Virus record (IMG/VR): IMGVR_UViG_3300049001_000044
Coordinates: 279,230-343,229 of that record
DNA: 64,000 nt
Reading direction: 5' to 3' (one strand)
In this document: piece by piece, positions 1 to 64,000 of the stretch
How the letters are laid out: each line of letters starts with the position of its first letter
Position numbering within the stretch: the first letter of the stretch is position 1
The notes under the pieces: generated by a model
The model's database searches: none
Seen by the model: only the letters and a program-made list of their open reading frames with translations
What the model was told of the DNA's origin: nothing
Program-made: the position numbers and the translations under genes

Positions 1-3000
1 GCTGGTGCAGCTGCTTGCGCTGCCATCGCAGGGCCGGCTTCTGTCACCTTACGACGCTCAAACTGCGCGCACCAACGGTCAAATGCTTTTTGCAGTTTTG
101 GTTGACCTGACGCAACGTCTTCTGGATCAAGATCGAGCGCAGGGAGAACATAGATCGTGTTGCCCTTGACGGTGATTGAATCAACGGTTACAACGGTTTG
201 ATTTTGAATAAAGCTGTCGTCACCCTCTTCTTCACCAAAGATCGCGTCTTCTTTCTTAGCCGCACTTAGTGCACGCAGTTTCGATGCTGTTGCGGGGATT
301 TCGATCCTATACTTAACATTCTTCACCGCTTCCTTCAGATCACCGGTAACGGCGTCAATGCCCAGCTGCTCAGCGACCATCTTCAGGTACTGACGAATCT
401 TGGCGTTGGAGTTAGCGAGCTTAGCACGTGAACGCAGAGCAGTGCGGAGGGTAGCACGACCCAGACGCTCGACCGATTCTGGCAGACCAACCTTCTGCAT
501 GATTTCCAGAATCATCTTCTGCATTGCATTGCCCAGCTCATCGTGCAGGGTTGCTTCTTGCGGGCTGGTGTTCGCCTTCATCAGTTCTTCAGTCAGGCGA
601 TTAACCCAATTACGGAACTGGCTGTCCTTCAGGAACTTGTCCGAAGCTTCAGCGACCGACTTGCGAAGGTCTGCCTTCTTCAAAGTCATGGCTTCGATTG
701 GTGCGCCGAGCAGGTACAGCAGAACGACCATTGCCTTCGACCCGCGGTTAGGGAACGACTGCAGCAGTTTGGTTACTTCAGCAGGAAGAGTTGCGGCTTC
801 AGCGGCCGATTGAACTTCCTCTTTGTCTTCTACTTTCTTTGGAGCTTTCTTTTCGGTAAGAAGCTTCGATTTGAACTGTTGTCCGAATGTCATGTTGTGG
901 GACTCCTCTGTCTTTTTGGGTTTGGTGGCATTTTCTTCATCATCGTCTTCTTCCTCTTCATCGTCGGTGCCAGATGGTGGTGGTGGTGGTGTTTCGTCAT
1001 CATCGCCCTCTTCAGGAGGAGTGTCATCATCGCTTGGTGCTGCAACTTCACCGCCTACGACTTCATCATCGTTGTCAGTGTCGTCAGTCGTATCGTCGAG
1101 TTCAGATGTGGTGTCATCCGACGAAACGGCGTCTGGATTATCTACCTCGTCCGGCGTGGTGTCAGCGGCAGGTTGATCTTGGACATCAATGTTGTCGTCG
1201 TCGCCAGGTGAACCGCCTTCATCATCGTCGTCAGAAAAGACCGTGGTGTCGATACCAGAATCAGTGGTCTCGCCTGCCGGCTCAGGAGTTGACTCGTAGT
1301 CTTCTTCCTCTTCTTCCTCTTCCTCGCCATTCTGTTTGATGTCGCCCAAGTTGATGACTGGGTTAACTGAAGGGGTAATATCGGTGTTCGTGTCGGTAAC
1401 CTCTGCGCTGGCATTGGCGTCACTAGCTACTGGATCGCTAGAACCCTCGACGCCGGTTTCAGCATCAACGCCAACTGGGGTTTCACCAGTCGACTGGAAA
1501 TTCTGTGGCCATTCAACGTCAACGATGTCAAAGGTCATTGCCAGATCGTTGATCGCTTCTTCAGCATCGTCGGTCTCACCAAGTTTCTGCGACAGAGCGT
1601 CTTCAAAGCCGTCGGCTTGGGTGGCATTGACGTAGACCTTTGCGATCGAGCCATCATCCATCTCCAGACCGAAAGCAACGGTGTCAACCTCATCGTTTAA
1701 CTCGTGCGCCTTGTCAAGGTAGCGAGTAACGTCCGCGTCAGTCACGTTGTCACCAACGCTTGCGTTGTTTCTCAGCTGTTTGAACTCGACATCGTTCTGG
1801 GCGCTAACCGTATCATCGACGTCAGTAGCATTTTGGTTCATGACGTCGAACTCTACCAACTGCAGAAGAGATTCATTTACGCCAGGCTTTGCGAATTTCT
1901 TCTTCACGACGAAGGTTCGCTTACGCTTGACAATGTTCTTTCCAGACCCGATTGATTGTGGAAGCGGTGCGATAGCATCCGCTCCTGTTGTTGCTGGCTG
2001 CTGCGGAACGACACCAGCGGGAACACCGCTTGGTGCAACGTCTTCCTCGCTCAATGCCTTCAGCAAGCTGAATGATTCTTTCACTTTATCGCTCCCTTTG
2101 AAAAGCGATTGGATAGTTCTACCGTACAGCGACATGATGAGTTCAGCCGGGGTCTCCGACTTATCAACAGCCTGATCAATCAAGTTGATGTCGCGCTTAA
2201 TCTCTGCGAATGCAGTGAGGGTGCGCTTGATCACGGTAGGGGACAGTCCGATCTCTCTCCCAGTCTTTAACTTTAGTTTGTAGGTGTCAGCTTCAGCCTT
2301 GAACTTGTCAACGATCTCATCTACTTCTTCGATCGTATTCTGCAGAATGGCTGAAACCTTTTGGCGCATCGCTGGGAAACTCTGGATGTGAGTCACCTTT
2401 GCGATATTTTCGGCGGTCTCTTGGGGAGTCGCGCCTTTGAACTTAGCGATGGTCTTTCGTGCGGACGAAGACACCGCCAATTCTCGGATGCCCAGCAAAC
2501 GGGCAATACGAATCTTTGCTTGACCAAATGCACCACCTCGCTTATCTAGTGGGGCGTCTTGATCGTCAGTAACAACCGGTCCACTCGCTACATCGCGAAT
2601 GGAATTGTTGAAGCTATTAAGTGCAGTGAACACGTCGCGATCAACCAACTTCACTTGGTCGCCGGTGTCGGGATCACGAAGTATCACACCTTCAACGCCG
2701 GTGTCTTCGCTTGGATCCAGCTCGTCTGCTTGGAGTTGTGGCTTGATCTTCCTGACGTAGTTGTTCAGTAGGATTTCCTTGATGGGCAGCTTATAAGTCT
2801 GAAGGATGACGCTAAGGATTCGCTCCCTTTCCGCCTTCATCTTCTCCCTACCTGCCTTCTCAACACTACCTAGCTTAACCTCTGCGACCTCTTTGTTGGT
2901 CATATCAGAGTACGTGGCGTTTGACTTGCGTAGGAACTTTTCCAGCTCCTTCAACTTCTTCAGTGCGTCGGCGGTGTTCACCTTCGAATTGTCGACTGGG

Positions 3001-3557
3001 CGAACCTGCGTAAACTCCCACTGCAACTGTTCCTCGTTGTATTGGAGTTGGTCACCATCAGGTGAATCAACTACCGTAGAGGTGACGTTGACAATGGTGT
3101 TGTCTAGGCGATTGCCAAGAGCGTCAACCTTCTTTGAATCGGCAGTGATGGGACGAAGGATGACGATGTAATTCTTACCATCCATGTCATATGTGACGGT
3201 GTTCGGTTGACGACCGAAGAGAACTTCAATCTCGACGATATCACCAACAGCGAGAACCTTGAGGATGGTTTTCTTAACCTGTTCCAGGGCTAGGTGAGCA
3301 GCGCGGAATCCATTGAAGGCAGCGATAACTGGATAGTCGTCTACGGAGTAGAATCTACCGTTGCGCTTACCCTTACCTTCTCGCGAAGTGAAGAAGCCCT
3401 TCTCATCGACGCCGATCCATAGATTCGCGCCATCGAGCTTCTCAGTAGCAACCTTGCTCTTGAGATTCTCTACGGTGTCGATAAATTTTTCTAGTGGCAG
3501 ATCCTCGAGATGGGCGATGCCCTCTCTGATCACTTCGCCTTTTTGAATTCTGCTCAT
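1..3557 (-). CDS. Very large (>1185 aa, 3'-truncated by window) putative head-packaged polyprotein: N-terminal ligase-type nucleotidyltransferase domain, long Asp/Glu-rich linker, helical domains
   Basis: Manual translation from ATG 3557 (MSRIQKGEVIREG) stays open to base 1; it is absent from the ORF track because no stop lies in the window. Motifs ATEKLDGANL (I), VEGVILRD (IV), VKLVD (V). Recurrent [LVI]-x-E-[S/A] sites. Confidence 0.8.
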   Translation of the reverse strand, partial: MSRIQKGEVIREGIAHLEDLPLEKFIDTVENLKSKVATEKLDGANLWIGVDEKGFFTSREGKGKRNGRFYSVDDYPVIAAFNGFRAAHLALEQVKKTILKVLAVGDIVEIEVLFGRQPNTVTYDMDGKNYIVILRPITADSKKVDALGNRLDNTIVNVTSTVVDSPDGDQLQYNEEQLQWEFTQVRPVDNSKVNTADALKKLKELEKFLRKSNATYSDMTNKEVAEVKLGSVEKAGREKMKAERERILSVILQTYKLPIKEILLNNYVRKIKPQLQADELDPSEDTGVEGVILRDPDTGDQVKLVDRDVFTALNSFNNSIRDVASGPVVTDDQDAPLDKRGGAFGQAKIRIARLLGIRELAVSSSARKTIAKFKGATPQETAENIAKVTHIQSFPAMRQKVSAILQNTIEEVDEIVDKFKAEADTYKLKLKTGREIGLSPTVIKRTLTAFAEIKRDINLIDQAVDKSETPAELIMSLYGRTIQSLFKGSDKVKESFSLLKALSEEDVAPSGVPAGVVPQQPATTGADAIAPLPQSIGSGKNIVKRKRTFVVKKKFAKPGVNESLLQLVEFDVMNQNATDVDDTVSAQNDVEFKQLRNNASVGDNVTDADVTRYLDKAHELNDEVDTVAFGLEMDDGSIAKVYVNATQADGFEDALSQKLGETDDAEEAINDLAMTFDIVDVEWPQNFQSTGETPVGVDAETGVEGSSDPVASDANASAEVTDTNTDITPSVNPVINLGDIKQNGEEEEEEEEDYESTPEPAGETTDSGIDTTVFSDDDDEGGSPGDDDNIDVQDQPAADTTPDEVDNPDAVSSDDTTSELDDTTDDTDNDDEVVGGEVAAPSDDDTPPEEGDDDETPPPPPSGTDDEEEEDDDEENATKPKKTEESHNMTFGQQFKSKLLTEKKAPKKVEDKEEVQSAAEAATLPAEVTKLLQSFPNRGSKAMVVLLYLLGAPIEAMTLKKADLRKSVAEASDKFLKDSQFRNWVNRLTEELMKANTSPQEATLHDELGNAMQKMILEIMQKVGLPESVERLGRATLRTALRSRAKLANSNAKIRQYLKMVAEQLGIDAVTGDLKEAVKNVKYRIEIPATASKLRALSAAKKEDAIFGEEEGDDSFIQNQTVVTVDSITVKGNTIYVLPALDLDPEDVASGQPKLQKAFDRWCAQFERRKVTEAGPAMAAQAAAP

Positions 3558-7400: not shown

Positions 7401-7428
7401 GCAAAATAAAAGGGCCCGAAGGCCCTTT
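7401..7428 (-). terminator. Rho-independent terminator
   Basis: AAAGGGCC-TTCG-GGCCCTTT followed by T-tract on minus strand. Confidence 0.8.
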
Positions 7429-7464: not shown

Positions 7465-8187
7465 TCATTCACCTTCGTAATCGGCGCGGGTACCACTGCG
7501 CCAGCTGCTGGTGTCTACGACGAAGTATTTGTCGTCACTTGGGATGTCTTGGCCTTCATCGTCTTCGGATCCAGTCACGTAGATGAGAACCGAATCTGCA
7601 TCTGGGCATTTAGCAATTTCGATGCCGTGAACGGTCTGTCCCTCAGCATCGAGGTAGTAGGTAACAGATTCAAAGCTACCCTGTTCCCAGTCAGAATTTT
7701 CAAGCATGTCCTTTTCATCTGGCTGTTCCTTGTAGAATGCATCCAGATGCTGCTGGAGATTTTTGCCCTCGTAGCTTGCACCAGCCGATTCGTTTAGGCC
7801 ATCTTCAGTGAGAAGCTTCTCCATTGCGGCCTCGATGTCTTTCGCTTCATCGCCTGTCAGTTCCTTGATGAGCGTGACTTCTGCCTGGTAAACAGCTTCA
7901 CCAGCCATGAGGTTGAAGTTGTCCTCATCGTCCTCGTCATGGTCACTCACCAGCTCGAAAGTAGCCCCGCCAATTGGGCGAAGGAGATGGTTGATTTCCT
8001 GCTCGATGTCTTCCCCGTGCTCGGGGAAGTCATAACGAACTCCCCACGTAATTCGATTACCTTCCACGTAAGGATCAGCCCCTTGAGCACCTCGTACGTC
8101 CAGCGTACGCTTGACCGCTTCCAAGATCAGTGCTTTGACGTCAGGCGCACCTTCTTTCAGTGCCATCAGTTCTTTGATCAGTTGCAT
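7465..8187 (-). CDS. Acidic putative internal head protein
   Basis: Leader MQLIKELMALKE|G; internal LLTE and LNES sites; very acidic. Confidence 0.7.
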   Translation of the reverse strand: MQLIKELMALKEGAPDVKALILEAVKRTLDVRGAQGADPYVEGNRITWGVRYDFPEHGEDIEQEINHLLRPIGGATFELVSDHDEDDEDNFNLMAGEAVYQAEVTLIKELTGDEAKDIEAAMEKLLTEDGLNESAGASYEGKNLQQHLDAFYKEQPDEKDMLENSDWEQGSFESVTYYLDAEGQTVHGIEIAKCPDADSVLIYVTGSEDDEGQDIPSDDKYFVVDTSSWRSGTRADYEGE

Positions 8188-8190
8188 TGG

Positions 8191-8793
8191 TTACTCCTCT
8201 TCTTCGTTGTGGAATGAATCTTCGGATGGTGGAAAGCTGAGATGCACCGCATAGCCGCCATCCTCCATACCCTCGTCATCGGGGATGCCGTCCATGAGGG
8301 ATAATTCCGTGTCACCGTGCATGGCAATCATGTCATTAAACCACGAATGGAAATGTTCCATCTTAGTTTTTCCTTCTGCCTCGGTGACAGCACGGACCCA
8401 CAGGTGCGCTTCACGCTCTTCAGGGTCTTCGAAGTCGATAGAGATTACTGCATCACCGGATTCATGCTCAACGTACATATCCCCTCCAGGATGAGATTCA
8501 TTCACTGACTCAGTAGTCATCGCCTCGACTTTCGTCTTGAACTTCTGCAGGCTGGTCGAATACACTGGACGATTCTTGTCACCATCCATGTCCTCATCAA
8601 TATCAGAGAGGAAGTACACCAGGTCATCTTCGATTTTCTGCACGCGGAGAATATCGCCAGCTTGATGGCCTGCGTTGATACGACCTTGGTCGTACGCGCT
8701 CGCAATGAAATTCTTGGTGACTGTATAAAGGCTACCCTCTTTGATACTCGCGCTGGCCTCAGATAGGGCCAAAAGTTGTTTCAACAGTTCCAT
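8191..8793 (-). CDS. Acidic putative internal head protein
   Basis: Leader MELLKQLLALSE|A; internal TTESVNES. Confidence 0.7.
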   Translation of the reverse strand: MELLKQLLALSEASASIKEGSLYTVTKNFIASAYDQGRINAGHQAGDILRVQKIEDDLVYFLSDIDEDMDGDKNRPVYSTSLQKFKTKVEAMTTESVNESHPGGDMYVEHESGDAVISIDFEDPEEREAHLWVRAVTEAEGKTKMEHFHSWFNDMIAMHGDTELSLMDGIPDDEGMEDGGYAVHLSFPPSEDSFHNEEEE

Positions 8794-8807
8794 ACTTACT
8801 CCTGTTT

Positions 8808-9065
8808 TTAGATTGGAATTTGTAGCATCGTACCAACTTTCATCTCTTCAATGCTCAGGATAACGGTTTTCATTCTTGTAATCTCATCTCTGTCAGACAA
8901 TAATTCTTCTGCATGCGATTCAGAATTGGCAATCACTACGTAGAATTCATCATAGCCCTTATGACCAGGATTTTTGTTATCTCTACGGAATTTAACGTAG
9001 TATGCTTTCGACGTGCCAGCTTTACGACTTGCACTTTCCCTCATAAGTTCTCTCATTAGTTCCAT
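8808..9065 (-). CDS. Small putative internal head protein
   Basis: GGAGG RBS then MELMRELMRE|S (start 9065). Confidence 0.65.
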   Translation of the reverse strand: MELMRELMRESASRKAGTSKAYYVKFRRDNKNPGHKGYDEFYVVIANSESHAEELLSDRDEITRMKTVILSIEEMKVGTMLQIPI

Positions 9066-9128
9066 ATTTCCTCCAAACAACCAGTGTTAATTAAATTATA
9101 CACTGACTTCAGTAGTTTTATACGTGAT

Positions 9129-9311
9129 TTAGCTCGGCATATTAGCTTTAGTCTCTTCTGAATGCTTCTTCCCCATTCTCGCGAGAGCAATATTTCTCCT
9201 GGCTTCCTCACTAATTGGCTTGCGAGGCTTCCTAGGCTTTGCGCTTCTTTCAAAGCTTTGTACGGCGCGACTCCATGAATTAACTCCTATAGAGTCGTGC
9301 TGTTTTGTACC
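9129..9311 (-). pseudogene. Homing-endonuclease remnant carrying NUMOD3-like motifs
   Basis: Frame reads RKPISEEARRNIALARMGKKHSEETKANM; the RBS+ATG at 9276 is out of frame and closes after 8 codons. Confidence 0.6.
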
Positions 9312-10805
9312 TCAGGCGTAAAGCTTCACCAAAGTCTCCCAATTTGCTGCACCAGAAGCCGCCAAGTTCAGTGCACGTACAAGTGTACGCAGGGAGACTT
9401 CTTCCCTACGCTTACCTTCCTTGACCGTCCCCAGAACGTTTTCACGCTGCTTCTTGGTCAGGCTGAGGCCGTCTTCCAGAGGAATCTTGTGGAGGATCTG
9501 TTCCATACGCTCCAGCAGTTCTTCTGGAGTTGGGTTGATCGAGATGACGAAAGCGCGGGTACGCAGCGCTTTGTCAGGGTCCAGCTTGTTCAGTGACAGG
9601 TTTGAAATGAAGATGATTCGGCCTTCGAAGTTGAAGTACTTCGGAATACGGTCGTCATCATCTTCAAGATTCTCCACGTCTTCAAACTCAGGGTCGATCA
9701 TATTCGAAGACTTTTTGTTCCAAACCAGCTTACGAATCTTCTTGGTGTCGGTTGCAGCCTTGATCAGGTTACGTGCGTCTTGGTCAGCGAGTGCGCCGTC
9801 CGAGTCGTCGAACAAGATGATGTCTTTGCGGTGGTGGAAGAGCAGCGAGTAGATACCGATTGCAGAAGCTGAACCAGTGTTCTTGAAGTAGCCATCACCG
9901 TCACGGAGACCTGCTTCATGCAGAGTGTCTTCAACGGTTTGGGTCTTACCAGTACCACCTTTACCTGCAACGAACAGTGCGTTGAAGGAGCCCTTGATCA
10001 GACCTTGAGTCAGACCTTGCAGGTGTTCTAGGGAGTCAGCGAACGGGATACGGTCAGCAGGATCTTCCAGCTCTTCTTGCGAAGTTGATTGGTATGTTTC
10101 GTTGGTACCGCCAGCCGTAACTAGCAGCTCGCCGTCACCGTGCGCAAGCACTGCTGCAGCCAGTGTGTCTGTATCAACACCTGGAGCCAGCTGAATACGC
10201 TTGCCTTGCTTGACGAGCTGTTCGTCGTAGTCGCCATTTACCAGCACGTCGAAAGCTTCAACAGTGGAGATGTGGTACTTGACGATCCAGTCAGTGCGGG
10301 TGCAGCTGGTCTTCTTGATACGGATGAGGAAGTCCTTGAGTGCAGATTCGTACGTGTACTCACCACGCTTTGCCTCAGAAAGGATGGCTTCGCTTTCAGC
10401 GACCATTGCTTTTTCTGGCTTGGCGGCGAAGACAGTGAAGGTGCCTTTCTTCGGATTAGCGACGGCGCCGGCCAGCGCGGGGAGAATCTTGACGAACGAA
10501 ATGCCGTCAGTCTTCATGGTGTAGGATGGGTCCTTCTTGCCGTCGAATACGTCGATCGACATGATGGAGCTGGACTTACCAGTTTTTGGTTCCGATTCCC
10601 AGTTGAAGCGGATGCACTTGGTGCTGCCGTCAAACACGTAGCGGAGACCCCAACCAGCAGTTTTGCTGTTCTTGAAGTGTTCGACGCCGGGAACTTTGAT
10701 GAGTCGTGCACCTACTGCACGCTCCAAGTAGGAGATAACTTTGGTCATCGCGGCATCGACTTTGTGGCTACCGATTCGCGCTTCAAATAGGTCTTGTAGT
10801 TTCAT
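9312..10805 (-). CDS. AAA+ ATPase with uncharacterised N-terminal domains, putative head cargo
   Basis: Walker A GKGGTGKT, Walker B ILFDDSD, sensor-1 IFISN, ALRTR; leader MKLQDLFE|A. Confidence 0.85.
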   Translation of the reverse strand: MKLQDLFEARIGSHKVDAAMTKVISYLERAVGARLIKVPGVEHFKNSKTAGWGLRYVFDGSTKCIRFNWESEPKTGKSSSIMSIDVFDGKKDPSYTMKTDGISFVKILPALAGAVANPKKGTFTVFAAKPEKAMVAESEAILSEAKRGEYTYESALKDFLIRIKKTSCTRTDWIVKYHISTVEAFDVLVNGDYDEQLVKQGKRIQLAPGVDTDTLAAAVLAHGDGELLVTAGGTNETYQSTSQEELEDPADRIPFADSLEHLQGLTQGLIKGSFNALFVAGKGGTGKTQTVEDTLHEAGLRDGDGYFKNTGSASAIGIYSLLFHHRKDIILFDDSDGALADQDARNLIKAATDTKKIRKLVWNKKSSNMIDPEFEDVENLEDDDDRIPKYFNFEGRIIFISNLSLNKLDPDKALRTRAFVISINPTPEELLERMEQILHKIPLEDGLSLTKKQRENVLGTVKEGKRREEVSLRTLVRALNLAASGAANWETLVKLYA

Positions 10806-10840
10806 TTAGGATTTGTCCTAGAATAGGGTTGAACGCGTCT

Positions 10841-10848
10841 TATTTATG
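10841..10848 (-). promoter_or_regulatory. Late promoter-like CATAAATA driving the 10805-7465 operon
   Basis: NTAAATA just downstream of a terminator. Confidence 0.6.
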
Positions 10849-10850
10849 CG

Positions 10851-10875
10851 AAAAGGGAGTCATCATGACTCCCTT
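10851..10875 (-). terminator. Rho-independent terminator
   Basis: AAGGGAGTCAT-G-ATGACTCCCTT plus T-run on minus strand. Confidence 0.7.
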
Positions 10876-30850: not shown

Positions 30851-31321
30851 ATGCTATTCGACGGTATTGAACTGATCGACTCATCAACAGCTGTAAATTT
30901 AACAATAGATAACGGCCCGAACTTCCCATCGGGAACTAAAGGCGAACTCTTCTTCAAGGACGGAGTTGGTCTGTTCGTCTTTGATGGCGCTACGTGGGTC
31001 CGCGTTCAAGGACAAACAGCCGCTAACTGTGTGACTGGCAATTTTCCAGGTGATGTGAAGCAAGTGGCAGGCACCGCTCGCTTTTATCCACGCGATGTTA
31101 TCGCGGTGACATCTATCTCTGCTTGGCTGTCTAGCAACGCAACTACTGATGTTGTTGCCACTGTTAGAAAGAATGGGAATGTGGTGACTAACATCACCAT
31201 CAAGGCGGGCGATTCGATGACGAAAATTGCTGCCAACTTTAGCGTGCTAACAACCGACTATCTGACGATGGACGTCGTAAGTGGTGTTGGCAAGGATCTA
31301 ACTATTCGACTGGACTACTAA
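30851..31321 (+). CDS. Putative tail-associated structural protein
   Basis: GATAAATA at 30801-30808, RBS GAGGT, start 30851; GELFF...FDGATW motif. Confidence 0.65.
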   Translation: MLFDGIELIDSSTAVNLTIDNGPNFPSGTKGELFFKDGVGLFVFDGATWVRVQGQTAANCVTGNFPGDVKQVAGTARFYPRDVIAVTSISAWLSSNATTDVVATVRKNGNVVTNITIKAGDSMTKIAANFSVLTTDYLTMDVVSGVGKDLTIRLDY

Positions 31322-31322
31322 C

Positions 31323-32150
31323 ATGCAAGCAAAATATGTTGCTCTGGGTTCTTACACTCAGGCGAACCTAATCTCTGACCTTGCTGCCATTCTTTGTGGC
31401 GCGCAAGTTGCAGACCTCTCAGCAACTTGCGACAAGGCAAACACCACGATCGTAAGCACTGTTGCCCCTGGCTGGACTCTGGTAGATGCCAACGCATCTA
31501 ACTTAGGTAAAGTCATCTCTGCCCCAGATATGAATGGCAATCCGAAGTATGTGTACATCTACGCATCAGGCACTTCGCAGATTGCTATCAGAGTGTATGA
31601 GACTTGGAACAGTACCACCCACACTGGTACTAACCCAAGTGGCGCATACGTCTTGAGCAATGGTACGAGCTTCATGGTCTTTGGTACCCCGCAAACAGCA
31701 TACATCTCCGGTGGTGCTGACGGTTTTGGTGTGCTCGAAGTGTCTCGTGATGTCGCATACCTGCAAAACAACACTACCTACCCCGCTACCGTTGCTGGCG
31801 GAGCATACGGTTTTAGTAGCCCGACGGCCATGTCAATGCCTAGGGGCAAGAATATGACAGCTGCCGGTGACACCCTACCGTACCCTGTTCAATCCGCAAC
31901 GATCACGGCAAGATCCAGCAGTTCGATTTTGGCTGGAACCACTGCACGGCAAGACGCCAACGGTGTTCAGTACATTGAAGTACGTCCTATTTGGATCGCT
32001 CTATCCGACAACACGATCATCGGCCGCCTCTACGATATCGCAGAGATCACTCGTGGTGGCTACACTGTGTTCGACACGTTCAGCGACGGTGTTGACACGT
32101 GGATGGTTCTCCCAGGCTATAGTGGTTTGATGGCTCTCAAGGTAAAGTAA
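31323..32150 (+). CDS. Tail/virion paralog 1 of 3
   Basis: Shared motifs DLS..CDK, PGWT, YETWN..THTGTN, DT.SDG, ALKV. Confidence 0.75.
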   Translation: MQAKYVALGSYTQANLISDLAAILCGAQVADLSATCDKANTTIVSTVAPGWTLVDANASNLGKVISAPDMNGNPKYVYIYASGTSQIAIRVYETWNSTTHTGTNPSGAYVLSNGTSFMVFGTPQTAYISGGADGFGVLEVSRDVAYLQNNTTYPATVAGGAYGFSSPTAMSMPRGKNMTAAGDTLPYPVQSATITARSSSSILAGTTARQDANGVQYIEVRPIWIALSDNTIIGRLYDIAEITRGGYTVFDTFSDGVDTWMVLPGYSGLMALKVK

Positions 32151-32164
32151 GGAAAGGAATTCTC

Positions 32165-33061
32165 ATGTTCGCAAAATACGTAACCACTTCTTCGCCTACT
32201 CAGGCAAATGTGATCGCTGATATCGCCGCTCTTTTGGCGGGCGCAGCAATTACTGACTTGTCCTCTTCTTGCGACAAGTCTAACTCAACCCTCTTGAGCA
32301 CTGTTGCCCCAGGTTGGACCATTACTGACAACAATGCTGGCAGCTCAGGATACATCCTTTCAGCGCCAGACCTGGCTGGCAACACCAAGTACGTCAAGCT
32401 ATTTGCTTCTAATGCAACGTACTTGGATATTCAGGCGTATGAAACCTGGAATTCCACCTCGCACACTGGTACTAATCCAACCACCGCACTTGGTGCAGTG
32501 TCGACCTCTCCAGGCGTGACAGTAAATGTTGTCAATTACTTTTTCATTTTTGCAACCGCGAGATCATTCATTGTTATGGGTGGCGGCTCTAATCCAGCAG
32601 GCGGTGGCGGTATTGGTGCATTTGAATTCACGAGAGAAGCAGCTTATCTCCAAGGAACCACCTACCCAGCAGTATGCGTCGGTATGTTGGCAGGTCTTAC
32701 CAATAGTAACAAAAACATGAACATTTCACGTACTAAGAATCTCACTGCCGCAGGAGATACTGTACCAACGACTGCTCTCTCCGCAACAATTGCCGCTCGC
32801 AATGTCGCCGCTGGGGGCATTACCTCGCCAACCTCCTACCTCATAGATGCGAATGGCACATACTACAATGAAATTCGCCCTATTTGGCTAGCTACTTCTG
32901 GCGCGGGGGCGGCAATCTATGGCAAGTGCATTGATGTGTTCGAGACGACTAACTTAAGCGCGGTCGGTAACCCTCTTGACACTCTGTCAGATGGCACCGG
33001 TACTTACATGATCTTGGTGCAGACCACTGGTGTTGGGACTTTGATCGCTAAGGTAGCATAA
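32165..33061 (+). CDS. Tail/virion paralog 2 of 3
   Basis: Same motif series as paralog 1. Confidence 0.75.
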   Translation: MFAKYVTTSSPTQANVIADIAALLAGAAITDLSSSCDKSNSTLLSTVAPGWTITDNNAGSSGYILSAPDLAGNTKYVKLFASNATYLDIQAYETWNSTSHTGTNPTTALGAVSTSPGVTVNVVNYFFIFATARSFIVMGGGSNPAGGGGIGAFEFTREAAYLQGTTYPAVCVGMLAGLTNSNKNMNISRTKNLTAAGDTVPTTALSATIAARNVAAGGITSPTSYLIDANGTYYNEIRPIWLATSGAGAAIYGKCIDVFETTNLSAVGNPLDTLSDGTGTYMILVQTTGVGTLIAKVA

Positions 33062-33071
33062 GGAGAAACAC

Positions 33072-33986
33072 ATGCTGGTAAAATACGTAACTAATGCGTC
33101 TGTGACGACCATAAACATTATTAACGATGTGGCTTTGCTCTGCACCGGCGGAAGCATTTCTGACTTGTCTACAGGCTGCGATAAAGTGTACACGACAATC
33201 TTGGCTAAGATTGTTAACCCTGGTTGGACTCTAGTTGACAACGCCGCTCCAAATACCGGCGTTGTCATTTCATCACCAGACGTGGATGGCAACATCAAGT
33301 ATGTGAGGCTATCTCTGGTGGGCGCAAGTAATAATGTAAGCTTTGACTTGTTCGAATCATGGAACGCTACGACTCACACTGGTACTAATCAATCTTCCTA
33401 CCCTGCAGCTGTAACAGCCACCGGCGGGTCGAAGCAAACTTTTTATCTTTACGTCACCCCAAGAACAATCTACTTTGCTAAACCTGCAACTATCTCTAAT
33501 GGTATCGTGACTCACAATGGTGGTGGAACATTTGAGGTCTCTAGGGATGCCCTCTATCTAAAGGGTACAAACTACCCCGCGTTTTGCACGGGAGCCGACC
33601 AGGGGCTAATACCATATGGAAGCGGCAACAGTTATTCAATGGTGTTCCCAAGAATTAAAAATCAGTCTGGTGTTGGTGATGTTACGGGCACAAGCGCGCT
33701 TGGCATGACTGGTACAATATGCGCCAAATACTACGGTGCCGGGGGCACGGTTGGCTCGCCAGGAAGGCCGAATAGAACCGCTACTGATGCCACATACTAT
33801 GACTTCCGTGACATGTGGGTACTTTGTAGCCTTTCAGGAAGCAATGGAACTATCCTAGGCAAGATGTATGATGTCAAAGAAATTGCGTATGGCGCTGCAA
33901 ATACGGGTGACACTTTCAGTGATGGTACAGATACTTACATGGCATTCTTGACTAACTATGGCTGCTTTGCATTGAAGGTGGCATAA
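33072..33986 (+). CDS. Tail/virion paralog 3 of 3
   Basis: Same motif series, more diverged. Confidence 0.75.
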   Translation: MLVKYVTNASVTTINIINDVALLCTGGSISDLSTGCDKVYTTILAKIVNPGWTLVDNAAPNTGVVISSPDVDGNIKYVRLSLVGASNNVSFDLFESWNATTHTGTNQSSYPAAVTATGGSKQTFYLYVTPRTIYFAKPATISNGIVTHNGGGTFEVSRDALYLKGTNYPAFCTGADQGLIPYGSGNSYSMVFPRIKNQSGVGDVTGTSALGMTGTICAKYYGAGGTVGSPGRPNRTATDATYYDFRDMWVLCSLSGSNGTILGKMYDVKEIAYGAANTGDTFSDGTDTYMAFLTNYGCFALKVA

Positions 33987-34417: not shown

Positions 34418-34834
34418 TTAGTCAAGGAAGATCACGCGTGCAGTGCCTGCCTGAGCAGCTGAGAACTGCAGTTCAACCGTATTTTCATCAATGATTCTGA
34501 TGAGGTCGGGGAGGATGACAGCTTTGTTCTCATCGAAGGCCTGGATGATCACATTCTCAGAATCGAGATTGTGTTCAATGGTCCAGACAGTTTCAGGAGA
34601 AGCAACCGCGAGTACGAACTTACGCACACTAGACAGGCCGCCAGCACCACCTAGGTTGGTACCAGTCAGCACACCATTCACCATAGCCAGAACTTGGCCT
34701 TCTGTCATGGTGACGCCATCGAACTGTCGAGCACCAGGACCACGACGAACAATGATCGACTCTTGAGGAACGTCTACATCCAGGTAACCACGCTTAGGAA
34801 GTTCCCGTTGGATGAAGTCTTCAAACGCGCTCAT
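34418..34834 (-). CDS. Virion/tail protein
   Basis: WTIEHNL...VIIQAFD motif. Confidence 0.7.
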   Translation of the reverse strand: MSAFEDFIQRELPKRGYLDVDVPQESIIVRRGPGARQFDGVTMTEGQVLAMVNGVLTGTNLGGAGGLSSVRKFVLAVASPETVWTIEHNLDSENVIIQAFDENKAVILPDLIRIIDENTVELQFSAAQAGTARVIFLD

Positions 34835-36495
34835 TATGCGGCCTCCGTAATATCAACCATCAAAGTACCAGTCGTGTTGGACTGTGCGTATGCAGAGTCA
34901 GTGAGGAAGAGATACCCACCGTTAGGGTCATACTGACCTTGCGCGTTCACAATGGTGAAGCCCTGGAAGTGGTCAACAGTATCCTTGAACAGAGTCAGGT
35001 TGTTCGCAGTACCAGAGTACTTTGCGGTTACCTTGTCGATGTTGCCGATAAGAGTGCCGATTGCGTGGTATTGCTCGAACGCTGCGAAGGTGATAGTGCG
35101 AGTTGCGAAACCACCAACAGTGTAACTTGCTCCAGCCGTGATCGTATTACCAATGACGCTTGCTTGGTTGGTCATCACCAAGTTGCTGAAGGTCTGTGCG
35201 CCTTTTGCATCGCCATCGACAATGCGCAGGGTACGCTGCCAGTTGTTACCAGACTGGGTCCATGCACCCTGCCAAGTACCCGAAGATGCGGTGAGCGAAG
35301 GAGCCGAAGACAGGGTTTCAGTAGGCGTGATGACGACGACGTAGTCAACACCAGTTGGCGAAGACAGCAGACGTGTTGGGTTACCAGTGATCGAGATCGA
35401 AGCGGTAGGAGCTGCGTCTGCGATAACGACCGCGCTAGATGCAGTGGAGACTGCGCCATTGCTGGTCTTGGTAGCCGTGATGGTGTAGTTATTCGAACCC
35501 GTTACGTAGGTACCAGACACGCGGGTAACGGTCTTCGACGCTGCGTAAGTAGATGGGTTCGCAACCGACAGGTTAGCAGAAGTCGTGTATGCCACAGTAT
35601 CTGCGTTGGTGATGGTAGCAGTGACGGTAGCTGATTCAGTACCCTTCAGAGCTGTTTGGCCAGCAGGATAAGTGATCGTACGTGCGCCAATCGTTGGGTA
35701 GGTTTGGTTCAGCGTGACGGTGTTGGTAGAGACGAACGTGTTACCAAAGGTACCAAGTGCATTCCTTCCGTGTGCCGAAACAGTCTGTGCGCCAGCACCC
35801 GAACCAACAGTGAAGGTACCACTGAAGGACTTGTAACCAGTGCCAAAGGAGTCGTCGCCGCCAAGGGTGAGCGAAGACAGACTACCAGCTGCGCCGCCAG
35901 CAATAATTTCTACATAGGTCGCAGCATTTTCAATACGACCGGAAATTTGTACCACGTCGCCCGACTTAACTTCAGTCTGAGAACCTGGTAGAGCGCCAAT
36001 CAGCAGGGTGTCCATCTGTGGGCCTGCTGCTGCGCGATGAACGACGCAAGTCGCAACACCGCCAGTCGAAGAGGTTGCGGTGACAGTGACGTCAGCAGTT
36101 ACGTTAGTGAGGTCAACGTAGCCAGTGAAGAAGCGTTTGTCACTTGCATCCTCAACCAGCGCCACGGTTGCTGGCATGCCTGGCAGGGGTGGGTTGGTAT
36201 CAACAGTGATCGTTGGGGAATAGAATTGCCCACCACCCTCAGCGATTAGAGTAACACGAACGTTGTTCGTGTCAGTCGTACCATCAGTGATGACCTTGTT
36301 TGAAGGAACGGTGTTAGGAACATACTGCTTTGCACCTACGTTACCAGTGGAAGTAGGTGCGATGTTCGTGAAGAAGACGCCACCGCCTGCACCCTGCGTA
36401 AGAGCAGAGACAAGGCGGTCAACGTACTGCTTCGTTACGGCGTCCATGTTCTGCGTTGGATCGTCCGAGAGTGATGCGTGTTGATAAATTTTCAT
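34834..36495 (-). CDS. Thr/Gly-rich beta-structured tail fibre or virion surface protein
   Basis: DAVTKQYVD repeat motif; Ig-like composition; CATAAATA at 36526-36533. Confidence 0.7.
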   Translation of the reverse strand: MKIYQHASLSDDPTQNMDAVTKQYVDRLVSALTQGAGGGVFFTNIAPTSTGNVGAKQYVPNTVPSNKVITDGTTDTNNVRVTLIAEGGGQFYSPTITVDTNPPLPGMPATVALVEDASDKRFFTGYVDLTNVTADVTVTATSSTGGVATCVVHRAAAGPQMDTLLIGALPGSQTEVKSGDVVQISGRIENAATYVEIIAGGAAGSLSSLTLGGDDSFGTGYKSFSGTFTVGSGAGAQTVSAHGRNALGTFGNTFVSTNTVTLNQTYPTIGARTITYPAGQTALKGTESATVTATITNADTVAYTTSANLSVANPSTYAASKTVTRVSGTYVTGSNNYTITATKTSNGAVSTASSAVVIADAAPTASISITGNPTRLLSSPTGVDYVVVITPTETLSSAPSLTASSGTWQGAWTQSGNNWQRTLRIVDGDAKGAQTFSNLVMTNQASVIGNTITAGASYTVGGFATRTITFAAFEQYHAIGTLIGNIDKVTAKYSGTANNLTLFKDTVDHFQGFTIVNAQGQYDPNGGYLFLTDSAYAQSNTTGTLMVDITEAA

Positions 36496-43311: not shown

Positions 43312-43581
43312 TCAGGGGTTCTTTTTAACGTATCGAATATTAGGAGGTTCATCTACCTCAACTGCGCCATCAAACATTGATGTATCAATCCAGTCAACAT
43401 CATAGTTGTTTGGGCCGGTGCTGACTCTATACTGCTCACTTGGAAGACCAGCATTTCGTGGCCCTGTCTCTACGAACACTGTCTCACCCGCGTAATCACC
43501 ATGCTCAGGTTTATCAGCGAGTCGATAGCACTTCCCAATCTGTGGTCTAAACGTGGCCTCAAATAGTTCCGCCATTTTCAT
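43312..43581 (-). CDS. Small putative internal head protein
   Basis: Leader MKMAELFE|A. Confidence 0.6.
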   Translation of the reverse strand: MKMAELFEATFRPQIGKCYRLADKPEHGDYAGETVFVETGPRNAGLPSEQYRVSTGPNNYDVDWIDTSMFDGAVEVDEPPNIRYVKKNP

Positions 43582-63068: not shown

Positions 63069-64000
63069 ATGAAAACATTCAAACAATTCCTCTCCGAAGC
63101 CGAGAACGCAGGATACCACTACGGCGATCTTCAGTATGGTAGAGACACCGCCCTCGGGCGAATGAGTGGCAGGTCGACAGGCCATTTCGGTACCGGCGTC
63201 TACTTCCTCTCTCAACCAATGTCAAACACAGGTCGCGACGATCGCCCCGTCAAGAAAGTCGATCTTAGTAAGTACCACCTCGCCAAACCTCGAGGAAAAT
63301 CCGGCGCAAAACAACTTCACGACGCCCTCAAGAAAATCAACTCACTCTTACATAATGAAGACAAAGATGAAGAACCACGCCTGATTAGAAAAGCCGCTTT
63401 CGAACTATGGTTGGCCCTCATGCCTGCGAACGAAGATAAGATCATCGACATTATTAAGAAGAGCTTGGAAGTTGTGCGTGCTAAGTACGACGTCGTAAGC
63501 CATACCTCCGAATACGCAGAGAGTTGCTCCACTCTCGTAATGAAAGAATTAGGATATGATGGAGTTGACGTCAGAGGAATTGACGGCTTTGACAACACCG
63601 ATTATGGCACAGTCATCTATGCGAGAGAACTATCGCAAGACGATCTTACTGAAGCAAAATTCGACAAGAATGTAGATGTTGAAGAACACGGCGACGGCTA
63701 TTACACCTTCACTGTCAACGGTAAGTTCTACCTCTGCAGCTTCTCTCCTGAGGAAAACGTTAGCAAATACGGTCCAAACTTTAGCTTCGGTCTCTACGAC
63801 GAAAAAGCGGAAGGTAGCGATATCTCAGTCACTGGTACGGGTAATGAATATGAAGTCTTCTCTACTGTAGTTAAGATCCTTCGCGATTGGATGGAGTTAA
63901 AGAAAGCTGACTTCCATTTCACTGCAGCGAAAGACGAACCTTCCCGCGTAAAGTTGTACGATAGAATGGTAAAGCGGCTGAAGTTGGTTGATGGTTGGAA
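63069..64000 (+). CDS. Putative head-packaged protein (3'-truncated): ADP-ribosyltransferase-like domain plus second domain
   Basis: Leader MKTFKQFLSE|A; GYHYG...GHFGTGVYF...LGYDGV...YGTVIY; LTEA junction; GCTAAATA 63031-63038; open to window end. Confidence 0.7.
   Translation, partial: MKTFKQFLSEAENAGYHYGDLQYGRDTALGRMSGRSTGHFGTGVYFLSQPMSNTGRDDRPVKKVDLSKYHLAKPRGKSGAKQLHDALKKINSLLHNEDKDEEPRLIRKAAFELWLALMPANEDKIIDIIKKSLEVVRAKYDVVSHTSEYAESCSTLVMKELGYDGVDVRGIDGFDNTDYGTVIYARELSQDDLTEAKFDKNVDVEEHGDGYYTFTVNGKFYLCSFSPEENVSKYGPNFSFGLYDEKAEGSDISVTGTGNEYEVFSTVVKILRDWMELKKADFHFTAAKDEPSRVKLYDRMVKRLKLVDGW

What the first reader, a model, noticed from the sequence alone, without database searches (positions are those of the whole stretch)
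7465..10848. Late operon of capsid-targeted cargo proteins including an AAA+ ATPase
Seen: four genes after CATAAATA begin MKLQDLFE|A, MELMRELMRE|S, MELLKQLLALSE|A and MQLIKELMALKE|G. Similar leaders occur at 43581 (MKMAELFE|A), 63069 (MKTFKQFLSE|A) and 3557. Established: T4 internal proteins use a ~10-aa MKT(Y/F)xEF(I/L)xE capsid-targeting sequence that is removed by the prohead protease. Inference: a genome-wide injected-protein arsenal. A packaged AAA+ ATPase with an unknown N-terminal domain would be an unusual cargo, possibly remodelling host defence complexes on entry.
Basis: partly seen in the sequence, partly recalled or inferred. Interest (0 to 1): 0.68.

Follow-up and report, generated by a model that had tools for sequence, protein, structure and literature searches.

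The report
Capsid-targeting leaders in a jumbo phage
A 343-kb T4-related environmental phage puts a short N-terminal peptide, like the one T4 uses to load proteins into its head, on about thirty otherwise unrelated proteins, one of them a widely conserved AAA+ ATPase, so it probably packages a large protein cargo; no experiment on this phage has tested that.

Summary
Four minus-strand genes (10805-7465) lie between two intrinsic terminators, behind CATAAATA. They begin MKLQDLFE|A, MELMRELMRE|S, MELLKQLLALSE|A and MQLIKELMALKE|G.

- **Leaders are far above chance.** About 29 genes in the 343-kb genome carry one of three leader classes. The class-A pattern sits at 14 N-termini against 0.06 expected. 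The mature parts are mostly unrelated.
- **The T4 machinery is present.** The genome encodes a gp21-type prohead protease, a gp23 capsid protein and a gp55 late sigma factor.
- **ATAAATA behaves as the late promoter.** It occurs 48 times between genes, against 2-13 for same-composition words. It heads structural genes and sits about 35-40 nt before the AAA+ gene in all six related loci read.
- **The 497-aa protein has four parts:** leader, alpha/beta domain, winged helix, AAA+ module. It has over 120 full-length orthologues. L6-x-E8 and a second linker site, L142-x-E144|A, are kept in all 32 aligned.
- **The other three genes vary.** Genes 3 and 4 are acidic near-orphans. Relatives carry different leader-bearing genes there.
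- **Indirect virion evidence.** In the cultured relative RsoM2USA, two leader-bearing proteins are published virion proteins.

Verdict: a T4-type capsid-targeting system, expanded. Packaging, cleavage and injection are inferred, not shown.

The parts
10851..10873 (-). Intrinsic terminator (GC-rich hairpin plus TTTT) that closes the upstream unit, directly before the promoter
   Evidence: Read from the sequence. The same hairpin-then-promoter layout precedes the AAA+ orthologue in L028, L029, L072, L073 and L074.
10841..10848 (-). CATAAATA, a T4-type late promoter (gp55-dependent class), 35 nt upstream of the ATG
   Evidence: ATAAATA occurs 48 times in intergenic DNA against 2-13 for each of the 20 same-composition permutations, most often 20-40 nt before start codons. 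It heads the protease, sheath-like, baseplate-wedge, tape-measure-like and fibre genes. It is conserved about 35-40 nt before all six AAA+ orthologues read. A gp55 homologue is present.
9312..10805 (-). Gene 1, 497 aa. Leader residues 1-8 (10805-10782); alpha/beta domain 13-125 (10769-10431, NdhV/DUF2996-like fold); disordered linker 131-147 holding the conserved site L142-x-E144|A (E144 codon 10376-10374); winged-helix domain 150-240 (10358-10086); AAA+ module 255-497 (10043-9315)
   Evidence: More than 120 full-length orthologues. E8 and E144 are invariant with a hydrophobic P3 in 32/32 sequences. AF2 mean pLDDT 81, residues 1-12 and 131-147 below 50. Foldseek matches RuvB, NorQ/CbbQ, NSF and RFC at E about 1e-6. 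Winged-helix matches have Z 5-6.5. phrog_1250 E 1e-35, homologous to T4 NrdC.10.
9138..9260 (-). Remnant of a GIY-YIG/NUMOD3 homing endonuclease gene, with no start codon, inside the AT-rich gap 9311-9066
   Evidence: tblastx gives 51% identity over 41 aa to the intact 307-aa endonuclease gene at the same position (L074 2342-3265) in a phage whose AAA+ protein is 81% identical. Gap GC is 0.42 against 0.50 for the genome.
8808..9065 (-). Gene 2, 85 aa, leader MELMRELMRE|S (9065-9036). AT-rich (GC 0.38), so probably arrived with the endonuclease
   Evidence: No Pfam or PHROG family and no tblastn match among phages.
8191..8793 (-). Gene 3, 200 aa, leader MELLKQLLALSE|A (8793-8758). Mature part is acidic (pI 4.35, 23% D+E)
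   Evidence: Only itself found by word search. 37% identity over 243 aligned residues to a stretch of L072 that spans two adjacent ORFs, each with its own leader.
7465..8187 (-). Gene 4, 240 aa, leader MQLIKELMALKE|G (8187-8152). Mature part is acidic (pI 4.08, 25% D+E)
   Evidence: Only itself found by word search. No usable Atlas hit. Only the leader aligns with gene 3.
7409..7428 (-). Intrinsic terminator closing the unit
   Evidence: 8-bp stem, 5 GC pairs, T-rich tail.
43312..43581 (-). Another class-A leader gene in the window (89 aa, MKMAELFE|A)
63069..64000 (+). Class-B leader gene (MKTFKQFLSE|A). It runs over the record end and continues across the 127-bp terminal overlap to 330 aa
   Evidence: The same ten-residue leader is on RsoM2USA ORF89, a reported virion protein with an unrelated mature part.

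Best explanation
The window comes from a 343-kb T4-related jumbo phage of the XacN1/RsoM2USA lineage. The unit 10873-7409 is a late transcription unit: terminator, CATAAATA, four genes, terminator. Each product starts with an 8-12-residue amphipathic propeptide ending in hydrophobic-x-Glu followed by Ala/Ser/Gly. That is the form of the T4 capsid-targeting sequence and of sites cut by the T4-type prohead protease. The likely mechanism has three steps. First, the leader docks the protein on the scaffolding core of the prohead. Second, the gp21 homologue removes it after Glu. Third, the trimmed protein stays in the head with the DNA and is available for ejection into the next host. About 29-38 genes of the genome carry such leaders in three length classes, so the phage probably loads a large and varied cargo. 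Gene 1 is the conserved member: leader, alpha/beta domain, winged helix, AAA+ ATPase. It has a second invariant L-x-E|A site in its disordered linker, so the mature form may be the winged-helix-AAA+ piece (residues 145-497). Genes 2-4 occupy a fast-changing slot that in relatives holds other leader-bearing genes. Shown here: the sequences, their enrichment, conservation, folds, promoter motif and machinery genes. Inferred: targeting, cleavage, packaging and injection.
For: Leaders:
- Enriched about 250-fold at N-termini.
- Attached to unrelated mature proteins.
- Encoded with varied synonymous codons, so selection acts on the peptide rather than the DNA.

Machinery:
- Peptidase_S77 (gp21), 84.7 bits.
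- Gp23 capsid protein, 312 bits.
- gp55 late sigma factor, E 1.5e-27.
- The capsid protein, the vertex paralogue and the protease each carry L-x-E|G/S near the N-terminus.

Control:
- The same scan on T4 returns IPII and IPIII.
- The class-B leader MKTFKQFLSE differs little from T4's MKTYQEFIAE.

Orthologue conservation:
- E8 and a hydrophobic P3 are kept in 32/32 AAA+ orthologues at 49-81% identity, while P2 varies.
- The NUDIX hydrolase and the P-loop kinase keep a leader in both this phage and RsoM2USA, and the NUDIX leader changes class.

Late class:
- The motif statistics and its conservation before the AAA+ gene in six loci of 38-53% GC.
- Leader genes are 4.5 times more often directly behind the motif than other genes (P = 0.002).

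Virion evidence in a relative:
- RsoM2USA ORF89 and ORF132 carry leaders and are reported virion proteins. Their masses match the paper to 0.02 kDa. Chance is about 0.01.

Literature:
- T4 propeptides of 10-20 residues target proteins to the core and are cut after Glu (PMC5694885).
- T-even internal proteins share only the targeting sequence (PMC3012670).
Against: - No virion proteomics, N-terminal mapping or transcript data exist for this uncultured phage.
- No cultured phage in the collection has a full-length orthologue of the AAA+ protein, so nothing experimental bears on it directly.
- 17 of 29 leader genes have no exact ATAAATA in their own unit by my operon rule.
- Some cargo types, a NUDIX hydrolase and a nucleotide-kinase-like P-loop protein, are not classical head proteins.
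- Genes 3 and 4 are very acidic, unlike the basic T4 internal proteins.
- The ATPase-domain homologue in T4 (NrdC.10) has no leader.
- A TATAAT hexamer inside the AT-rich insertion, about 30 nt before gene 2, could give non-late transcription of genes 2-4.
Confidence: 0.65

Rival explanations
1. The leaders do target proteins to the prohead, but some or all of these four products are assembly or core components. They would be degraded or expelled at maturation, as T4 gp22, gp67 and gp68 are, rather than injected as effectors.
For: Mature genes 3 and 4 are strongly acidic (pI 4.1-4.4) and carry 2-4 internal [LI]-x-E sites. The putative scaffold protein next to the capsid gene starts with a similar motif (MDEILQKLLSSE). 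Two conserved linker sites in the AAA+ protein (E137, E144) would allow fragmentation. T4 core proteins are cut into short fragments (PMC5694885).
Against: Core or scaffold genes are normally conserved and sit in the head module. Genes 2-4 are near-orphans in a variable slot far from it. Enzymes such as the NUDIX hydrolase, the P-loop kinase and the AAA+ ATPase make little sense as scaffold. Leader-bearing ORF89 and ORF132 persist as visible bands in mature RsoM2USA virions.
Confidence: 0.2
2. The shared N-terminus has nothing to do with the capsid. It could be a common amphipathic helix for another purpose, such as another localisation, regulated turnover, or efficient translation initiation.
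For: No direct evidence ties these proteins to capsids. Some cargo types are unexpected. Not every leader gene is demonstrably late.
Against: Codons vary synonymously, which argues against an mRNA signal. The invariant features are exactly P3 hydrophobic and P1 Glu, with P2 free. The match to the T4 targeting sequence is close. There is association with late promoters, and virion detection in RsoM2USA.
Confidence: 0.1
3. The pattern is an artefact of paralogy or chance: recently duplicated genes that still share their first codons.
For: Three class-B pairs are real paralogues, and a fourth, weaker class-B hit links two of them. Genes 3 and 4 are adjacent and share leader class C.
Against: 25-fold or greater excess over any chance model. 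The 15 class-A proteins have no pairwise similarity beyond residue 14. Leaders persist across orthologues at 49% identity, and the same leader sits on non-homologous proteins in different phages.
Confidence: 0.03

Closest known systems
T4 internal proteins IPI-III and Alt (capsid targeting sequence, cut by gp21)
   Same: Short N-terminal propeptide with the same hydrophobic register ending in Glu. The cargo proteins are otherwise unrelated, transcribed late, scattered and variable. A cognate S77 protease and a gp23/gp24 shell are present (PMC3012670, PMC5694885).
   Different: About 30-38 carriers rather than about 4-5. There are three leader length classes (8, 9-10 and 11-12 residues). The cargo includes predicted enzymes and an AAA+ ATPase. 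Genes 3 and 4 are acidic. There is no sequence similarity of any cargo to the T4 proteins except the NrdC.10-like ATPase domain. Nothing has been shown experimentally.
T4 gp24 and gp23 propeptides
   Same: The capsid, vertex and protease homologues here also carry L-x-E|G/S near the N-terminus.
   Different: Those are shell or protease proteins, not cargo.
Ejection proteins of phiKZ-like giant phages (SPN3US, phiKZ)
   Same: Many packaged proteins are processed after Glu by a gp21-related protease. A possible long N-terminal propeptide, if E144 is used, would resemble the propeptides of more than 100 residues in SPN3US (PMC5694885, PMC10052503).
   Different: Different phage lineage, a different cleavage motif context, and long rather than 8-12-residue propeptides as the rule.
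T4 NrdC.10 (phrog_1250), function unknown
   Same: The AAA+ module is homologous (E 2.8e-20, 30% identity over residues 258-494).
   Different: NrdC.10 is 326 aa and has no leader. It shows no match to residues 1-257 here, which hold the alpha/beta and winged-helix domains. It lies in the nrdC-mobD block of T4.
Ralstonia phage RsoM2USA virion proteins ORF89, ORF132, ORF86
   Same: Closest cultured relative (capsid protein 64% identical). ORF89 and ORF132 carry class-B leaders and are virion proteins. ORF86 is a double-AAA virion protein.
   Different: Their mature parts are not homologous to the window's four proteins. Its NrdC.10-like ATPase has no leader and carries an HExxH insert. The paper does not mention leaders or processing.

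Membership tests
T4-type CTS-bearing head cargo (IP/Alt class) | N-terminal propeptide of about 10-20 residues, amphipathic, ending in (L/I)-x-Glu | tested here: met
   All four genes and about 25 others. The register is the same as T4 IPII/IPIII recovered by the same scan. Class A is 8 residues, slightly shorter than any T4 example.
T4-type CTS-bearing head cargo (IP/Alt class) | Cognate gp21-type (S77) prohead protease and T4-type capsid genes in the same genome | tested here: met
   PF03420 84.7 bits against a 27-bit cut-off. PF07068 312 and 158 bits.
T4-type CTS-bearing head cargo (IP/Alt class) | Late expression from a TATAAATA-type promoter with gp55 | tested here: inconclusive
   The promoter motif and gp55 are present and conserved. 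There are no transcript data. Genes 2-4 follow a 245-bp foreign insertion.
T4-type CTS-bearing head cargo (IP/Alt class) | Leader conserved while cargo diverges or is exchanged | tested here: met
   E8/L6 are invariant in 32 orthologues. Different leader-bearing genes occupy the slot after the AAA+ gene in L028 and L072-L074. The NUDIX orthologues carry leaders of different classes.
T4-type CTS-bearing head cargo (IP/Alt class) | Protein present in virions with its N-terminus starting after the Glu | not testable with these tools
   Only indirect: RsoM2USA ORF89 and ORF132 are in virion gel bands (PMC8504454). Their N-termini were not mapped.
T4-type CTS-bearing head cargo (IP/Alt class) | Ejection into the host with the DNA | not testable with these tools
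   No data.
AAA+ ATPase | Walker A, Walker B, sensor 1, Arg finger region and helical lid with sensor-2 Arg | tested here: met
   Invariant G281-T288 (GxGGxGKT), D333-D334, N402, R415/R417 and R473/R477. The model shows an alpha/beta core plus lid. Foldseek matches RuvB, NorQ, CbbQ, NSF and RFC with probability 1.0, TM by target up to 0.59.
AAA+ ATPase | Curated Pfam AAA family score | tested here: not met
   AAA_16 scores 17.9 bits against a 32.6-bit cut-off, and AAA_25 scores 14.5 against 27. Membership rests on fold and motifs, not on a Pfam family.
AAA+ ATPase | Ring assembly and ATP hydrolysis | not testable with these tools
   Not attempted.
T4 NrdC.10-like proteins (phrog_1250) | Profile match over the family's length | tested here: met
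   phrog_1250 E 1e-35, profile positions 72-322 of 327, protein residues 240-494. The N-terminal 240 residues lie outside the family.

The most novel reading that the evidence does not exclude
A widespread clade of uncultured jumbo phages delivers a conserved nucleic-acid-binding AAA+ motor (winged helix plus AAA+) inside the capsid. The motor would be released from a removable N-terminal targeting domain by two conserved protease cuts (after E8 and E144), and would act in the first moments of infection on the incoming genome or on host nucleoprotein or defence complexes. Next to it sits a rapidly exchanging slot of leader-tagged effector genes. Together with about 30 other tagged proteins, including a NUDIX hydrolase and a nucleotide-kinase-like protein, this would be the largest T4-type injected arsenal described.
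Probability: 0.3. Interest if true: 0.8.

Novelty: new variant of a known kind. Interest (0 to 1): 0.6.

Why it matters
The T4 capsid-targeting sequence is the textbook way a phage loads anti-defence proteins into its head, and it is used as a tool to package foreign proteins. This finding suggests the same device was scaled up in the XacN1/RsoM2USA-like jumbo phages. A simple sequence rule then picks out roughly 30-38 candidate packaged proteins per genome, most of unknown function. That gives a ready, testable list of candidate first-minute effectors. One is an AAA+ ATPase conserved in over 120 metagenomic phages. The finding also points to a variable slot next to that gene, where new cargo seems to be swapped in. 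The papers on this lineage that turned up in the library searches do not mention capsid targeting.

Tried and rejected
- Megablast of the unit against 50,697 phage records found no match.
- Pfam and PHROGs found nothing for genes 2-4.
- Word-index searches for genes 4 and 3 found only the query itself. These searches see only close or word-sharing relatives.
- tblastn of gene 2 against phages found nothing.
- The Atlas look-up for gene 4 gave no usable hit, and its Atlas model is poor.
- BLASTP of gene 3 against gene 4 aligned only the leader.
- Fold searches of residues 1-250 gave no Foldseek PDB match at E <= 0.001. VIA gave many winged-helix hits at Z 5-6.5 for 151-225. For 13-118 it gave only middling hits, a phage P1 head chain at Z 6.2 and NdhV at Z 5.7. 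BFVD and Atlas returned mainly uncharacterised phage proteins and DUF2996. I treat the winged helix as likely and the first domain as unassigned.
- The class-B protein at 63069 was tested as an Alt-like enzyme by tblastn of all leader proteins against T4. Only the AAA+ protein matched, to NrdC.10.
- A sigma-70 promoter scan of the unit gave nothing above shuffles.
- No complex prediction was run.
Full report
**Origin of the window.** The window is bases 279230-343229 of a 343,229-bp IMG/VR virus record with 50.5% GC. Its ends share a 127-bp overlap. The genome encodes three T4-type functions:
- a major capsid protein (PF07068, 312 bits) with a vertex paralogue;
- a gp21-type prohead protease (PF03420, 84.7 bits);
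- a gp55-type late sigma factor (phrog_234, E 1.5e-27).

The closest cultured phages by capsid protein are Ralstonia phage RsoM2USA (64% identity) and Xanthomonas phage XacN1 (54%). More distant are the GAP32/CBB group. There is no nucleotide-level match to any deposited phage.

**The observation.** Four minus-strand ORFs lie at 10805-9312, 9065-8808, 8793-8191 and 8187-7465. The order along the transcript is:
- a hairpin plus T-run at 10873-10851;
- CATAAATA at 10848-10841, with the first ATG 35 nt further on;
- the four genes;
- a strong terminator after the fourth gene, at 7428-7409.

So the unit has clear borders. It is not seamless, though. A 245-bp stretch between genes 1 and 2 has 42% GC. 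It holds an unstartable reading frame with NUMOD3-like repeats. That frame matches the C-terminal part of an intact 307-aa GIY-YIG/NUMOD3 endonuclease gene. The intact gene sits at the same place in a metagenomic relative whose AAA+ protein is 81% identical. Gene 2 has 38% GC and probably came in with that mobile gene.

**Are the leaders more than chance?** A six-frame scan finds about 29 genes across the genome in three classes:
- Class A, 8 residues, MK[LVIM]x[EQD]L[FL]E followed by A/S/G/N: 15 genes.
- Class B, 9-10 residues, MRFKx[YF][LI]xE or MKTFKQFLSE: 10 genes.
- Class C, 10-12 residues, such as MELLKQLLALSE: 4 genes, three of them in this unit.

Allowing any residue after the Glu brings the count to roughly 36-38. 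The class-A pattern occurs at 14 called N-termini. It occurs 11 times at 86,706 internal positions, so 0.056 are expected at N-termini. With the first 14 residues removed, only four pairs, all in class B, retain BLASTP similarity. The leader codons vary synonymously: four Leu codons at position 6, and GAA or GAG at position 8. The constraint is therefore on the peptide. The same scan on T4 returns IPII and IPIII (MKTYQEFIAE|A) and few others. The class-B leader is close to that T4 sequence.

**Conservation.** The 497-aa protein has more than 120 full-length relatives in metagenomes, many on contigs of 230-380 kb.
- In an alignment of 32 of them (49-81% identity), Glu8 is invariant, Leu6 is nearly so, position 7 is free, and the next residue is Ala/Ser/Gly in 30.
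- That pattern, hydrophobic-x-Glu, is what the T4 protease recognises. This is established knowledge; PMC5694885 gives the examples ITE-6 and LTE-619 in Alt.
- Only one other such site is kept in all 32: L142-x-E144|A. It lies in the disordered linker (pLDDT below 50) between the first and second domains. A third site at E137 is kept in about three quarters.
- This predicts that the mature protein may start at residue 145.

Two other leader proteins have orthologues in RsoM2USA that also carry leaders. The NUDIX hydrolase has class A here and class C there. The zeta-toxin/kinase-like P-loop protein has mature N-termini that align exactly after the Glu.

**Late promoter.**
- ATAAATA occurs 48 times in intergenic DNA. 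Each of the 20 other words of the same composition occurs 2-13 times. The modal distance to the next start codon is 20-40 nt, and the strand follows gene orientation.
- Of ten genes sampled directly behind the motif, seven matched structural PHROG families, among them tail sheath-like, baseplate wedge, tape-measure/tail lysin-like and fibre or virion structural families. The prohead protease gene is also headed by it.
- All six AAA+ orthologue loci that I read have (T/C/G)ATAAATA about 35-40 nt before the ATG. Their GC ranges from 38 to 53% and their protein identity to the window's AAA+ protein runs from about 50 to 81%. In five of the six the motif follows a hairpin.
- Leader genes are directly behind the motif in 8 of 29 cases, against 32 of 413 for other genes (odds ratio 4.5, P = 0.002).
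- Many of the rest lie inside co-directional gene runs.

**The AAA+ protein.** AlphaFold2 with the orthologue alignment gives mean pLDDT 81 for the whole protein, and 83.5 (pTM 0.73) for residues 1-250.
- Residues 1-12 are unstructured.
- Residues 13-125 form an alpha/beta domain with only middling matches (NdhV/DUF2996-like).
- Residues 150-240 look like a winged helix. Dozens of IscR, PadR, ArsR and Z-alpha type matches appear at Z 5-6.5. This is consistent but not strong.
- Residues 255-497 are an AAA+ module. Foldseek matches RuvB, NorQ/CbbQ, NSF and RFC at E about 1e-6. Walker A, Walker B, sensor 1, the arginines and the lid are invariant.
- Pfam AAA models stay below their cut-offs.
- The module belongs to phrog_1250 and is homologous to T4 NrdC.10, a 326-aa protein of unknown function without a leader.
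- RsoM2USA's member of this family also lacks a leader and has a different N-terminus. A 642-kb uncultured phage has the full architecture and starts MKIKKYQAFYE|A.

**The variable slot.** Word-based searches of 5.8 billion proteins find nothing but the query for genes 3 and 4. Their mature parts are acidic (pI 4.1-4.4). In relatives, the position after the AAA+ gene holds other small genes, and nearly all of them start with class C or class A leaders:
- L072: MEFIKELLSLNE, MDLIKELLQLKE, MTNLIKELMSLKE.
- L073: MTLLKDLLSIVE, MSILKELLALCE, MTKLIKELQQLTE.
- L074: MKISELFE, MKLLKELMSLAE.
- L028: MNFKQFLAE.

Gene 3 matches a stretch of L072 that spans two adjacent ORFs (37% identity over 243 aligned residues), and each of those ORFs has its own leader. 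This resembles the variable internal-protein loci of T-even phages, where only the targeting sequence is conserved (PMC3012670).

**Experimental anchor.** The RsoM2USA paper lists ten virion bands identified by mass spectrometry (PMC8504454).
- By coordinates and mass, which agree to 0.02 kDa, ORF89 and ORF132 are the genes that begin MKTFKQFLSE|S and MKTFKQFLNTLME|A.
- With 8-15 leader genes among 486 ORFs, two or more among ten has a chance of 0.01-0.035.
- ORF86, another band, is a protein with two AAA modules. A packaged AAA+ protein is therefore not without precedent in this lineage, although the authors do not comment on it.
- The N-termini were not mapped.

**Conclusion.** The best reading is a T4-type capsid-targeting and propeptide system, expanded in number and in leader types. 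This unit combines a conserved AAA+ cargo candidate with a fast-changing cargo slot. I put 0.65 on targeting plus cleavage for these four proteins. I put about 0.3 on the stronger claim that the ATPase is injected and acts early. The main rival is a prohead-internal role without injection, at 0.2. The library searches for capsid targeting together with jumbo phages or the named members of this group returned no paper on this lineage that uses the term. The kind of system is known, however, so I rate it a new variant of a known kind.

**Limits.** Gene starts outside the unit come from my own simple ORF and RBS caller. The regexes were written after seeing the data. Operon assignment is heuristic. 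No transcript or read data were obtainable.

Noticed in passing
window 9066-9311 and 8808-9065: AT-rich insertion (GC 0.42 and 0.38 against 0.50). It holds a decayed GIY-YIG/NUMOD3 homing endonuclease gene, which is intact at the same site in L074 (2342-3265), followed by gene 2. A TATAAT hexamer lies about 30 nt before gene 2's ATG.
   Followed up: yes
window 10374-10376 (codon of Glu144 of the 497-aa protein): A second fully conserved L-x-E|A site, in the disordered interdomain linker. A third site at E137 is kept in about 75% of orthologues. The first 144 residues may be a removable targeting domain.
   Followed up: partly
L072:6541-7629: Gene 3 of the window aligns across two adjacent ORFs of this relative (121 and 239 aa). 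Each ORF has its own class-C leader, so cargo modules seem to be split or fused while each piece keeps a leader.
   Followed up: partly
window 3-3557 (-), gene continues beyond the window start: A protein of about 1,250 aa directly behind a terminator and AATAAATA. Its N-terminus is MSRIQKGEVIRE|G. A KLDG motif near the N-terminus recalls nucleotidyltransferase (ligase-type) motif I, but no Pfam family matched.
   Followed up: partly
window 34834-36495 (-): A 553-aa protein matching a tail-sheath PHROG (phrog_15433, E 1e-93) behind CATAAATA. It lies far from the main head and tail module of the genome (about 215-275 kb).
   Followed up: no
window 63069-64000 (+) and the genome start: The class-B leader gene runs over the record end. 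With the 127-bp terminal overlap it closes to 330 aa. No similarity to T4 Alt was found.
   Followed up: partly
G000:C1:56482-56949 and G000:C1:162987-163700: A NUDIX hydrolase and a zeta-toxin/nucleotide-kinase-like P-loop protein carry leaders (MKLHQLFE|A and MVSFKEFISE|S). Their RsoM2USA orthologues, ORF16 and ORF254, also carry leaders (MQLIKNLLQNTE|E and MTTFKEYLLE|G).
   Followed up: partly
G000:C1:217742-219859: Two class-A leader genes (81 aa and 622 aa) lie close downstream of the major capsid gene, separated from it by one 270-aa gene that starts MKLLQELQALANPQ.
   Followed up: no
G000:C1:223925-224551, 231899-232234, 248188-248568: A different shared N-terminus, M(D)xNKLRKLAG(L/M)..., sits on three proteins in or near the head module. 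Two of the three reach an L-x-E|S site within about 20 residues.
   Followed up: no
L026:2336-4858 (RsoM2USA ORF86): A published virion band of 96 kDa is a protein with two AAA modules (Pfam AAA, 54 bits). It has no homologue in the window's genome.
   Followed up: partly
window 31323-33986 (+): Three tandem paralogous genes (275, 298 and 304 aa) with similar N-termini follow a late-promoter gene at 30851. They may be fibre-like or other structural proteins.
   Followed up: no
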